In this document: positions 55,906 to 58,246 of the stretch, piece after piece
Numbering within the stretch: the stretch's first letter is position 1
Layout: each line of letters opens with the position of its first letter
From: Octopus sinensis
Taxonomy: Eukaryota
Direction: 5' to 3'
Assembly: GCF_006345805.1 (NCBI RefSeq)
Contig: NC_043020.1
Location: forward strand, 12,276,001-12,340,000
DNA length: 64,000 bases
Position numbers and translations under genes: made by a program
The notes under the pieces: model-generated
Told to the model about the DNA's origin: nothing
Seen by the model: only the letters and a program-made list of their open reading frames with translations
Database searches by the model: none

Positions 55906-58246
55906 CAACTTCTGGGGTTTATCCTGGGTCGTTCAAGCGGTGTGAGGTCTTGCGTTGTCTTGTAGAAGAACTAGCTTTTTGTTAACAAATGCCGGGTATT
56001 TTTGCCGGACAATGGCAAACGATTCCCTCAACTTCCTGGGGGTTTATTGTGGGTCGTTCAAGCGGTGTGAGGTCTTGCGTTGTCTTGTAGAAGAACTAGC
56101 TTTTTGTTAACAAATGCCGGGTACTTTTGCCGGACAATGGCAAACGATTCCCTCAACTTCCTGGGGTTTATCCTGGGTCGTTCAAGCGGTGTGAAGTCTT
56201 GCGTTGACTTGTAGAAGAACTAGATTTTTGTTAAAAAATGCCGGGTATTTTTGCCGCACAATGGCAAAAGATTCCCTCAACTTCCTGGGGTTTATCCTGG
56301 GTCGTTCAAGCGGTGTAAGGTCTTGCGTTGACTTGTAGAAGAAGTAGCTTTTTGTTAACCAATGCCGGGTATTTTTGCCGCACAATGGCAAACGATTCCC
56401 TCAACTTCCTGGGGTTTATTTTGGGTCGTTCAAGCGGTGTGAGGTCTTGCGTTGACTTGTAGAAGAACTAGCTTTTTGTTAACCAATGCCGGGTATTTTT
56501 GCCGCACAATGGCAAACGATTCCCTCAACTTCCTGGGGTTTATTTTGGGTCGTTCAAGCGGTGTGAGGTCTTGCGTTGACTTGTAGAACTAGATTTTTGT
56601 TAACAAATGCCGGGTATTTTTGCCGCACAATGGCAAACGATTCCCTCAACTTCCTGGGGTTCATTTTGGGTCGTTCAAGCGGTGTGAGGTCTTGCGTTGA
56701 CTTGTAGAAGAACTAGCTTTTTGTTAACAAATGCCGGGTATTTTTGCCGCACAATGGCAAACGATTCCCTCAACTTCCTGGGGTTTATTTTGGGTCGTTC
56801 AAGCGGTGTGAGGTCTTGCGTTGACTTGTAGAAGAACTAGCTTTTTGTTAACAAATGCCGGGTATTTTTGCCGCACAATGGCAAAGGATTCCCTCAACTT
56901 CCTGGGGTTTATTTTGGGTCGTTCAAGCGGTGTGAGGTCTTGCGTTGACTTGTAGAAGAACTAGCTTTTTGTTAACAAATGCCGGGTATTTTTGCCGCAC
57001 AATGGCAAAGGATTCCCTCAACTTCCTGGGGTTTATTTTGGGTCGTTCAAGCGGTGTGAGGTCTTGCGTTAACTTGTAGAAGAACTAGATTTTTGTTAAC
57101 AAATGCCGGGCATTTTCGCCGCACAATGGCAAAGGATTCCCTCAACTTCCTGGAGTTTATTTTGGGTCGTTCAAGCGGTGTGAGGTCTTGCGTTGACTTG
57201 TAGAAGAACTAGCTTTTTGTTAACAAATGCCGGGTATTTTTGCCGCACAATGGCAAACGATTCCTCAACTTCCTGGGGTTCATTTTGGGTCGTCAAGCGG
57301 TGTGAGGTCTTGCGTTGACTTGTAGAAGAACTAGCTTTTTGTTAACAAATGCCGGGTATTTTTGCCGCACAATGGCAAACGATTCCCTCAACTTCCTGGG
57401 GTTTATTTTGGGTCGTTCAAGCGGTGTGAGGTCTTGCGTGACTTGTAGAAGAACTAGCTTTTTGTAACCAATGCCGGGTATTTTTGCCGCAAAATGGCAA
57501 AGGATTCCCTCAACTTCTGGGGTTTTTTTGGGTCGTTCAAGCGGTGTGAGGTCTTGCGTTGACTTGTAGAAGAACTAGCTTTTTGTTAACAAATGCCGGG
57601 TATTTTTGCCGCACAATGGCAAAGGATTCCCTCAACTTCCTGGGGTTTATTTTGGGTCGTTCAAGCGGTGTGAGGTCTTGCGTTAACTTGTAGAAGAACT
57701 AGATTTTTGTTAACAAATGCCGGGCATTTTCGCCGCACAATGGCAAAGGATTCCCTCAACTTCCTGGAGTTTATTTTGGGTCGTTCAAGCGGTGTGAGGT
57801 CTTGCGTTGACTTGTAGAAGAACTAGCTTTTTGTTAACAAATGCCGGGTATTTTTGCCGCACAATGGCAAACGATTCCCTCAACTTCCTGGGGTTCATTT
57901 TGGGTCGTTCAAGCGGTGTGAGGTCTTGCGTTGACTTGTAGAAGAACTAGATTTTTGTTAACAAATGCCGGGTATTTTCGCCGCACAATGGCAAAGGATT
58001 CCCTCAACTTCCTGGGGTTCATTTTGGGTCGTTCAAGCGGTGTGAGGTCTTGCGTTGACTTGTAGAAGAACTAGCTTTTTGTTAACAAATGCCGGGTATT
58101 TTCGCCGCACAATGGCAAAGGATTCCCTCAACTTCCTGGGGTTCATTTTGGGTCGTTCAAGCGGTGTGAGGTCTTGCGTTGACTTGTAGAAGAACTAGCT
58201 TTTTGTTAACAAATGCCGGGTATTTTTGCCGCACAAATGGCAAACG
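55906..58246 (-). repeat. 124-bp tandem satellite (~19 copies) derived from mariner transposase coding sequence
   Basis: Period 124 (GGGTCG at 56051, 56175, 56299, 56423); minus strand of the unit reads FAIVRQKYPAFVNKKLVLLQ(D/V)NARPHTA*TTQNKPQEVEGI. Confidence 0.92.

What the first reader, a model, noticed from the sequence alone, without database searches (positions are those of the whole stretch)
55906..58246. Satellite DNA built from the catalytic core of a mariner transposase
Seen: each 124-bp unit, read on the minus strand, encodes ...RQKYPAFVNKKLVLLQDNARPHTA..., the (H/Q)DNARPH motif carrying the second Asp of the DD34D triad. The array is continuous with unique upstream transposase sequence at 58246-58400. 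The two left-most units keep GAC (Asp); the others have GTC/GTT (Val), and further variants (AAACG/AAAGG, TTTA/TTCA) occur in runs. Inference: in situ birth of a satellite from transposase coding DNA rather than from TIRs; a possible source of anti-mariner small RNAs.
Basis: partly seen in the sequence, partly recalled or inferred. Interest (0 to 1): 0.7.

Follow-up and report, generated by a model that had tools for sequence, protein, structure and literature searches.

The report
Tandem array from dead mariner transposase
A 124-bp piece from the middle of a dead, rearranged mariner transposon gene has been copied head-to-tail 19 times at this one spot; it is a clear but ordinary case of a transposon fragment turning into tandem-repeat DNA, with no sign of a function.

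Summary
Window 55906-58246 is a head-to-tail array of 18.9 copies of a 124-bp unit at 96% identity. On the minus strand each unit reads (F)AIVRQKYPAFVNKKLVLLQ[D/V]NARPHTA*TTQ[D/N]KPQEVEG. This is 64% identical to mariner-type transposases and covers the second catalytic Asp.

The array runs without a break into unique upstream transposase sequence (58247-58404, minus strand). The C-terminal part, with the third Asp, is at 58401-58596 (plus). The end of the reading frame and the 3' terminal region are at 58745-58822, after a 148-bp repeat insertion. No N-terminal part or 5' end is present.

All 19 units share one stop codon and the period is not a multiple of three, so the source copy was probably already dead. 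The left-hand units keep ancestral bases, and a five-unit block was duplicated, which points to growth by unequal exchange.

I found no second array in the window or in the public collections I could search. "Satellite" in the genome-wide sense is therefore unproven, and the small-RNA idea is untested. This is a new member of a known kind, transposon-derived tandem repeats, and of low to moderate interest.

The parts
55906..58246 (-). Tandem array of 19 units of 124 bp (18.9 copies). Each unit is a fragment of a mariner-type transposase gene covering ...AIVRQKYPAFVNKKLVLLQ(D/V)NARPHTA*TTQ(D/N)KPQEVEG, the region of the second catalytic Asp.
   Evidence: TRF period 124, 96% matches, score 4251. 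Unit alignment. Translation. 64% identity to P0002. Mos1 alignment.
55903..56398 (-). Units u01-u04, the oldest-looking end of the array. u01-u02 keep GAC (Asp). u01, u03 and u04 keep GAT (QDK). u02 instead has a private change at that site. The outer end of u01 is cut at ...CCCCAGAAGTTG|CTGTTTTTTTT, 8 nt short of the unit boundary.
   Evidence: Unit alignment and distance matrix. The outgroup L003 and the protein relatives have Asp and (T/Q)DK at these sites.
56644..57877 (-). Two paralogous five-unit blocks, u07-u11 (56644-57262) and u12-u16 (57263-57877). This is a block duplication inside the array. u10 and u15 are identical, and u11 and u16 differ at one site.
   Evidence: The blocks are 98.7% identical at lag 5, against 95.8-97.4% at every other lag. 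Distance matrix.
58247..58404 (-). Unique upstream transposase fragment, continuous with the array: (G)WWIYFCIPNMHKKWLSKRQLPEPVAKHRRFEHKRLLRI[15-aa deletion]G*TSDANLYSEQLEQTFAI. The first catalytic Asp motif (DEKW) is not retained.
   Evidence: Translation. Protein alignment A1. blastn to the relative L001 up to window 58404.
58401..58596 (+). C-terminal transposase fragment on the opposite strand: (PHP)...PDYYLFRSMAHFLRLQCFINKGEWVEASVTEFFVLKEKNWCQCGVK*VAES*LG... It includes the codon of the third catalytic Asp (GAT in the PDYY motif, about 58412-58417). It has an internal deletion of roughly 25 nt in the HPAYSPDLAPS region and carries stop codons. It meets the upstream fragment head-to-head at about 58401-58406.
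   Evidence: Translation. tblastn. Alignment A1. blastn to L002 and L003 from 58412-58414. Mos1 alignment.
58597..58744 (.). Insertion that splits the end of the transposase frame: a fragment of a dispersed SINE-like repeat followed by (GT)n.
   Evidence: Seven other copies of 58597-58668 in the window at 77-84% identity. (GT)n at 58670-58750. Inverted and direct matches to 55170-55284 and 55487-55601.
58745..58822 (+). Last codons of the transposase (E-C-stop, TGAGTGCTAG) and the 3' untranslated or terminal region of the mariner relic.
   Evidence: 76% identity over 78 nt to the sequence that follows the transposase frame in the relative L003, positions 3368-3442.
55487..55905 (.). Left boundary, not mariner-derived: a dispersed SINE-like repeat (more than 10 copies in the window), then (TA)n at 55801-55870, then 35 nt of unique A-rich sequence. 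No N-terminal transposase part or 5' inverted repeat is here.
   Evidence: blastn within the window. TRF. tblastn finds no N-terminal match anywhere in the window.

Best explanation
This is the wreck of one mariner-type DNA transposon in a very repeat-rich animal genome.

Inferred history:
1. The copy had already lost its reading frame.
2. A 124-bp internal segment was then duplicated in tandem. The segment runs from the codons for ..FAIVRQKYP.. to ..QEVEG and contains the second catalytic Asp.
3. The duplication then grew to 19 copies by replication slippage and unequal exchange between sister or homologous arrays.
4. Part of that growth was the duplication of a five-unit block.
5. A variant that had lost the Asp codon (GAC to GTC) spread through most of the array, while older variants survived at the left edge.
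6. At some point a rearrangement separated the array from the downstream third of the gene. The simplest version is an inversion or a template switch with a junction at 58401-58406. That downstream third now lies head-to-head on the other strand.
7. The N-terminal third and the 5' end were lost, and a SINE-like fragment was inserted near the stop codon.

The array most likely does nothing. It cannot encode a protein, and nothing in the DNA suggests a structured or hairpin RNA.

Shown: the anatomy, the homology, the shared stop codon, the left-to-right variant gradient and the block duplication.

Inferred: the order of events and the molecular mechanism.
For: - Array statistics.
- Unit homology to mariner transposases.
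- In-register continuity with the upstream coding sequence.
- The relative L003 carries the same segment once, colinear with its C-terminal region. The tandem and inverted state here is therefore derived.
- All 19 units share the TGA, and 124 = 3x41+1.
- Ancestral GAC and GAT survive only in u01-u04.
- u07-u11 against u12-u16 is 98.7%, versus at most 97.4% at other lags. u10 equals u15 and u08 equals u09.
- The C-terminal piece and the 3' end lie on the plus strand.
- The window holds many other short tandem amplifications of dispersed repeats, so local tandem duplication is common in this genome.
- None of 83 related mariner loci has a tandem repeat inside the transposase region, so this is a locus-specific accident and not a family trait.
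Against: - The source genome could not be searched, so other arrays of the same monomer may exist.
- The parent family consensus is unknown (closest DNA relative 77-81% identical). The native sequence at the duplication and inversion junctions is therefore inferred, and I found no convincing microhomology at the unit junction.
- The inversion model predicts the N-terminal part to the left of the array, and it is not there. At least one further deletion must be assumed.
- Bases 58380-58411 can be read on either strand: WIYFCIPN on the minus strand, or G..EI.P.P on the plus strand. The exact breakpoint is therefore uncertain within about 25 nt.
- Lack of function is a default assumption, not a result.
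Confidence: 0.78

Rival explanations
1. The array is one member of a genome-wide satellite family, or of a mobile composite element: a non-autonomous mariner derivative that carries an internal array and spreads it. On this view the array was not born at this locus.
For: Transposon-borne internal arrays that seed satellites are documented, for example the Tc1/mariner MITE miDNA4 in Xenopus and Helitron/Helentron arrays (PMC12628747; PMC9659126). The source genome could not be searched, so absence elsewhere is not shown.
Against: - There is no second copy of the monomer or of its mariner flanks in the 64 kb.
- The array joins its native upstream coding sequence in register.
- No inverted-repeat pair brackets it.
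- No array-derived peptide turned up among 1.8 billion representative proteins.
- The exact 24-mer is absent from JGI metagenome contigs.

The last two results are weak negatives.
Confidence: 0.13
2. The array is a source of small RNAs (piRNA or siRNA) that silence related mariner elements.
For: There is only general plausibility: 19 copies of a transposase segment would give dense targets or precursors if transcribed. No tool result bears on this.
Against: - The unit has no inverted copy, so no hairpin precursor can form.
- There is no Rfam match.
- The fragment on the opposite strand is a different part of the gene, so read-through would not give double-stranded RNA against the unit.
- No intact related mariner is in the window to be silenced.
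- No expression data are available.
Confidence: 0.06
3. The copy number, or the whole array, is an assembly artefact: one or two units expanded by the assembler.
For: Tandem arrays are a known weak point of assemblies. No reads were available to me.
Against: The units are not identical. They carry a structured pattern: a left-to-right gradient of ancestral to derived bases, private indels, and a five-unit block repeated with 8 differences. An artefactual expansion would not produce this.
Confidence: 0.03

Closest known systems
Tandem repeats or satellite DNAs derived from coding parts of transposable elements, such as PROsat and Pvc20 from LINE-1 ORF2, and chicken HinfI/SCR1 from the CR1 3' UTR plus part of ORF2 (table in PMC9659126). 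The review PMC12628747 states that satellites can arise from gag/pol domains or from central parts of DNA transposons.
   Same: The monomer is an internal, formerly coding segment of a transposable element, amplified head-to-tail. Coding capacity is lost. Growth is attributed to slippage and unequal exchange.
   Different: The source here is the catalytic core of a mariner-type DNA transposase. I found no example of this listed in those two reviews. Only a single 2.3-kb array still attached to its parent relic is seen, whereas the named cases are abundant genome-wide satellites.
miDNA4, a Tc1/mariner MITE of Xenopus tropicalis with an internal tandem-repeat motif (PMC12628747, PMC12054243).
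   Same: It belongs to the Tc1/mariner superfamily, has a variable-length internal array, and microhomology-driven replication or repair errors are the proposed cause of its expansion.
   Different: The miDNA4 repeat is non-coding, thought to be captured, and spread by a mobile MITE with both inverted repeats. Here the repeat is transposase coding sequence, the relic lacks a 5' end, and there is no evidence of mobility.
Bari1 heterochromatic cluster of Drosophila melanogaster, about 80 tandem copies of a Tc1/mariner element (PMC9659126).
   Same: It is a tandem array built from a Tc1/mariner-superfamily element at one locus.
   Different: In Bari1 the repeating unit is the whole element, and aberrant rolling-circle replication and reintegration are invoked. 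Here the unit is a 124-bp internal fragment.
Mboumar mariner elements in the satellite DNA of Messor ants (PMC2581405; listed in PMC9659126).
   Same: It is a physical association of mariner sequence with tandem repeats.
   Different: There the mariner is inserted into an unrelated satellite. Here the repeat itself is made of mariner sequence.

Membership tests
mariner-type (Tc1/mariner superfamily) transposase-derived DNA | Sequence similarity to the catalytic (DDE/D, Pfam Transposase_1 PF01359) domain | tested here: met
   The composite matches PF01359-bearing proteins at E 6e-27 and 46% identity. It matches Mos1 transposase 206-330 at E 3e-6 and SETMAR at 3e-5. The unit alone is 64% identical to P0002. 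The direct Pfam hit of the degraded composite is below threshold (13.8 bits against 24).
mariner-type (Tc1/mariner superfamily) transposase-derived DNA | Catalytic triad D,D(34)D in its conserved motifs (DEKW ... (H/Q)DNARPH ... PSDY) | tested here: inconclusive
   The second Asp codon is kept only in u01-u02. The third Asp codon is present in the plus-strand piece. The first Asp motif is replaced by PGWW. The three motifs are no longer colinear. In the closest relatives the spacing between the second and third Asp is 35 residues, not 34.
Complete mariner element | Terminal inverted repeats at both ends and an N-terminal helix-turn-helix DNA-binding domain | tested here: not met
   A 3' terminal region is found by homology at 58745-58822. 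No inverted copy of it and no N-terminal match exist in the window. This is a relic, not an element.
Satellite DNA | Head-to-tail array of a monomer with high inter-unit identity | tested here: met
   124 bp x 18.9 copies at 96% matches. Block duplication and identical neighbouring units.
Satellite DNA | High genomic abundance: long arrays and/or many loci | not testable with these tools
   Only one 2.3-kb array is present in the window. The source genome is not in any collection I could search. The negatives from metagenome contigs, exact ORF look-ups and the representative protein library carry little weight.
Transposon-derived tandem repeat formed in place | The array is physically continuous, in register, with the neighbouring sequence of the parent element | tested here: met
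   The right-hand unit u19 runs into ...LYSEQLEQTFAI of the same frame with a 1-nt indel. A relative shows the single-copy colinear state. Continuity on the other side is broken: u01 is truncated and the C-terminal part is inverted.
Small-RNA (piRNA/siRNA) source locus | Small RNAs mapping to the locus, or inverted repeats able to give double-stranded RNA | not testable with these tools
   No expression data are available. The DNA shows no inverted copies of the unit and no Rfam family.

The most novel reading that the evidence does not exclude
The locus is the founding array, caught early, of a lineage-specific satellite made from the catalytic core of a mariner transposase. Its transcripts are processed into small RNAs that silence the still-active members of that mariner family. 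This would be a transposon fragment recruited against its own family by tandem amplification, without insertion into an existing piRNA cluster.
Probability: 0.05. Interest if true: 0.6.

Novelty: new member of a known kind. Interest (0 to 1): 0.27.

Why it matters
Transposable elements are an accepted source of satellite DNA, but most documented monomers come from terminal repeats, untranslated regions or captured arrays. Few loci show the early stage with the array still attached to its parent copy.

This locus is a tidy example of that stage. The unit boundaries can be placed on the protein. The ancestral and derived variants can be ordered along the array. A block duplication shows how it grew.

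If the same monomer proved abundant elsewhere in the genome, the locus would help date and trace the birth of a satellite. On present evidence it is a local accident in a genome where local tandem duplication of repeats is frequent.

Tried and rejected
1. A protein-coding repeat or domesticated transposase. Rejected: the period is 3x41+1, every unit has the same TGA, and the longest stop-free stretch is 72 codons.

2. A second copy of the monomer or of its flanks in the window. None found.

3. The monomer elsewhere.
- The exact 24-mer is absent from JGI metagenome contigs.
- Exact look-ups of a 44-aa array ORF and of the 138-aa flank ORF gave nothing on record.
- A HMMER scan of 1.8 billion representative proteins with a 72-aa array ORF gave two hits. 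Both are frame-shifted translations of related mariner sequences, not array-derived peptides. One of them was confirmed as a single-copy relic.

4. A family-wide tendency to duplicate this segment. Across 83 related loci, no tandem repeat overlaps a transposase match.

5. Hairpin or structured RNA. No inverted unit copies and no Rfam hit. No tRNA-like genes in the window.

6. Microhomology at the unit junction. Comparing ...CTGGAGCAGA|CGTTTGCC (native upstream) with ...GTTGAGGGAAT|CGTTTGCC (unit junction) gives only a loose 6/10 resemblance. I make no claim from it.

7. Reading 58380-58411 as the native continuation of the unit on the plus strand (GTTGGGAATGCAGAAATATATCCACCACCCC, about ..LGGIEILPHP). 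This is plausible at first sight. However, the minus-strand reading (WIYFCIPNM) is contiguous with the upstream piece and aligns to a relative's DNA up to 58404. I therefore place the breakpoint at about 58401-58406. I note that the reverse complement of the WIYF codons (GAAATATATCCA) resembles EILP codons, which is a possible inverted microhomology.

8. Identifying the organism. An exact look-up of the LINE ORF gave nothing. I ran no further search on this. The repeats remind me of octopus DNA, but that is from memory and untested.

9. The first related-loci attempt with alignment A1 failed for lack of conserved columns. It was repeated with A2.

Full report
**Observation.** Tandem Repeats Finder reports a single array at 55906-58246 with period 124, 18.9 copies, 96% matches and score 4251. 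I cut it into 19 units, u01 at the left to u19 at the right, each 121-125 bp, and aligned them. On the minus strand each unit reads ESFAIVRQKYPAFVNKKLVLLQ[D/V]NARPHTA*TTQ[D/N]KPQEVEG. Because 124 = 3x41+1, the frame slips by one base per unit. All 19 units carry the same TGA after HTA.

**Homology.**
- The unit peptide is 64% identical over 42 residues to P0002, a mariner-type transposase fragment.
- A composite of upstream flank, unit u01 and the C-terminal piece described below finds ten proteins. The best has E 6e-27 and 46% identity, and nearly all of the ten carry Pfam Transposase_1 (PF01359).
- The same composite aligns to Mos1 transposase residues 206-330 (E 3e-6) and to SETMAR.
- In that alignment the unit's Asp falls on Mos1 D249 (LHDNAPSH), and the PDYY of the C-terminal piece falls on D284.
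- The degraded composite itself scores below the Pfam threshold.
- In the eight closest relatives where both motifs could be located, the second and third Asp are separated by 35 residues, not 34.

**Anatomy of the relic.**
- To the right of the array, 58247-58404 on the minus strand encodes the neighbouring upstream part of the same transposase: WWIYFCIPNMHKKWLSKRQLPEPVAKHRRFEHKRLLRI, a 15-residue deletion, then G*TSDANLYSEQLEQTFAI. This runs in register into u19.
- blastn against the DNA of a relative (L001) carries this alignment up to window 58404.
- From about 58401 the plus strand encodes the C-terminal part: (PHP)..PDYYLFRSMAHFL...EFF..K..W..GVK..AE.. It is alignable at the DNA level to relatives from 58412-58414.
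- So the downstream third of the gene lies head-to-head against the middle third.
- The plus-strand piece stops at about 58596. There a 148-bp fragment of a dispersed SINE-like repeat plus (GT)n is inserted (seven other copies in the window).
- After the insertion, 58745-58822 matches, at 76% over 78 nt, the last codons and the 3' terminal region of the closest DNA relative I found (L003).
- No N-terminal (helix-turn-helix) part, no first-Asp motif and no inverted copy of the 3' terminal sequence exist anywhere in the window.
- To the left the array ends inside u01, 8 nt short of the unit boundary. It ends against 35 nt of A-rich sequence, (TA)n and a SINE-like repeat.

**The single-copy state.** L003 is a contig from an ENA metagenome assembly. 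It was found through a frame-shifted ORF that matched the array translation. It carries a related relic that is 77-81% identical in DNA. In it the unit segment occurs once and is followed, on the same strand, by the C-terminal region. The tandem and inverted arrangement in the window is therefore derived. Among 83 related mariner loci, no tandem repeat overlaps the transposase match. The amplification is thus an accident of this locus and not a family trait.

**History written in the units.**
- Relatives and L003 have Asp (GAC) and (T/Q)DK (GAT) at the two main variable sites. These ancestral bases survive only at the left end: GAC in u01-u02, GAT in u01, u03 and u04. Units u05-u19 carry the derived GTC and AAT.
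- u01-u02 also share a private change, GTC for GTG in AIV.
- Inside the derived part, u07-u11 and u12-u16 are paralogous blocks. They are 98.7% identical (8 differences in 620 columns), against 95.8-97.4% at every other lag. u10 is identical to u15, and u11 differs from u16 at one site. u08 and u09 are also identical.
- This is the signature of growth by unequal exchange or slippage with partial homogenisation.
- The TGA shared by all units shows that the source copy was already a pseudogene, or else that the stop was homogenised very early.

**The junctions.**
- The unit junction is GGGAAT|CGTTTGCC. The native upstream context is GGAGCAGA|CGTTTGCC. I see no convincing microhomology.
- The head-to-head junction lies in CCACCA at 58401-58406. 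Bases 58380-58411 can be read on either strand.
- The reason is that the reverse complement of the WIYF codons, GAAATATATCCA, resembles the EILP codons that precede PHP in relatives. This could have served as inverted microhomology for an inversion or a template switch. That is inference and needs the parent consensus.
- A simple inversion of the middle segment within a plus-strand element would give the observed order. It would also predict the N-terminal part to the left of the array, which is absent. At least one more deletion is therefore required.

**Function.**
- The array cannot encode a protein.
- It has no inverted unit copies and no Rfam match.
- The window contains many other local tandem amplifications:
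  - a 43-bp x 85 array;
  - five short tandem arrays of a SINE-like repeat;
  - a perfect 20-bp x 13.6 array.
- Tandem duplication of repeats is therefore common here.
- My best explanation is a neutral, locally amplified fragment of a dead mariner copy (confidence about 0.78).

**Comparison with what is known.**
- Two reviews state that satellites arise from transposable elements, including gag/pol domains, LINE ORF2 and central parts of DNA transposons (PMC12628747; PMC9659126).
- For Tc1/mariner they list miDNA4 (a MITE with an internal array), the Bari1 whole-element cluster, and Mboumar inserted in an ant satellite. None has a monomer made from the transposase catalytic core.
- The locus is therefore a new member of a known kind.
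- Whether it deserves the word "satellite" depends on genome-wide abundance, which I could not test. The negatives from metagenome contigs, exact ORF look-ups and the representative protein library are weak.
- The organism was not identified. The repeat content fits an octopus-like genome, but that is from memory and untested. A recent annotation reports 66% repeats and many Tc1-Mariner families in Octopus vulgaris (PMC13282606).

**Verdict.**
Origin from coding DNA and local birth are supported. Satellite status and small-RNA function are not shown. The rearranged structure was missed.
- Interest is low to moderate (0.27).

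Noticed in passing
window 4525-8169: A larger and more uniform array than the one under study: a 43-bp unit (TCCTTCATATAACACCCGATTGCACCACAAAGCAACGTGAGAA) x 85 copies at 97% matches, with sharp unique flanks on both sides. Its origin was not examined.
   Followed up: partly
window 10033-10765, 11079-11817, 39940-40313, 47172-47822, 63278-63799: One dispersed SINE-like repeat (CCCACAAGGGGCTAAACACAGAGGGGACAAACAAGGACAG...) occurs five times as short head-to-tail arrays of 2-4 copies, with periods of 168-217 bp. 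Local tandem duplication of repeats looks common in this genome.
   Followed up: no
window 24076-24347: A perfect 20-bp x 13.6 array (AGTACTTATTCTTTAAGCTT, 100% matches). Its unit resembles an internal stretch of the SINE-like repeat that flanks the mariner array.
   Followed up: no
window 60504-60782, minus strand: A second, unrelated and more decayed Tc1/mariner-type relic. It covers the region of the third Asp (..SYSPNRPYLMLSDF*LFNLMKDTLRGQRFDD..) and is 27-35% identical to the same relatives.
   Followed up: partly
window 43720-44886 (also ORFs to 46758): A LINE-type retrotransposon ORF with an endonuclease domain (Pfam PF14529, E 5e-8) lies in the GC-richer stretch at 42-48 kb.
   Followed up: partly
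proteins P0001-P0007 and P0009 (relatives of the relic): In the eight closest mariner-type relatives where both motifs were found, 35 residues (not the canonical 34) separate the Asp of Q(Q/H)DNARPH from the Asp of PSDY. An extra residue sits in ..GIE(I/L)LPHPA... Whether this marks a described subfamily was not checked.
   Followed up: no
window 50173-50930 and much of 1-52000: There is extreme microsatellite load: (ACC)n of 255 copies, (GA)n and (GT)n tracts of 0.5-1 kb, and (AT)n of 150 copies. Strong local GC skew results, for example -0.72 at 50-52 kb.
   Followed up: no
L003 (ENA ERZ21867824, contig ctg69609l) 2900-3442: This is the closest DNA relative of the relic (77-81% identity). 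It sits on a 22.6-kb contig of a metagenome assembly and shares no other high-identity sequence with the window. Its host is unknown. It is itself frame-shifted and 5'-truncated.
   Followed up: partly
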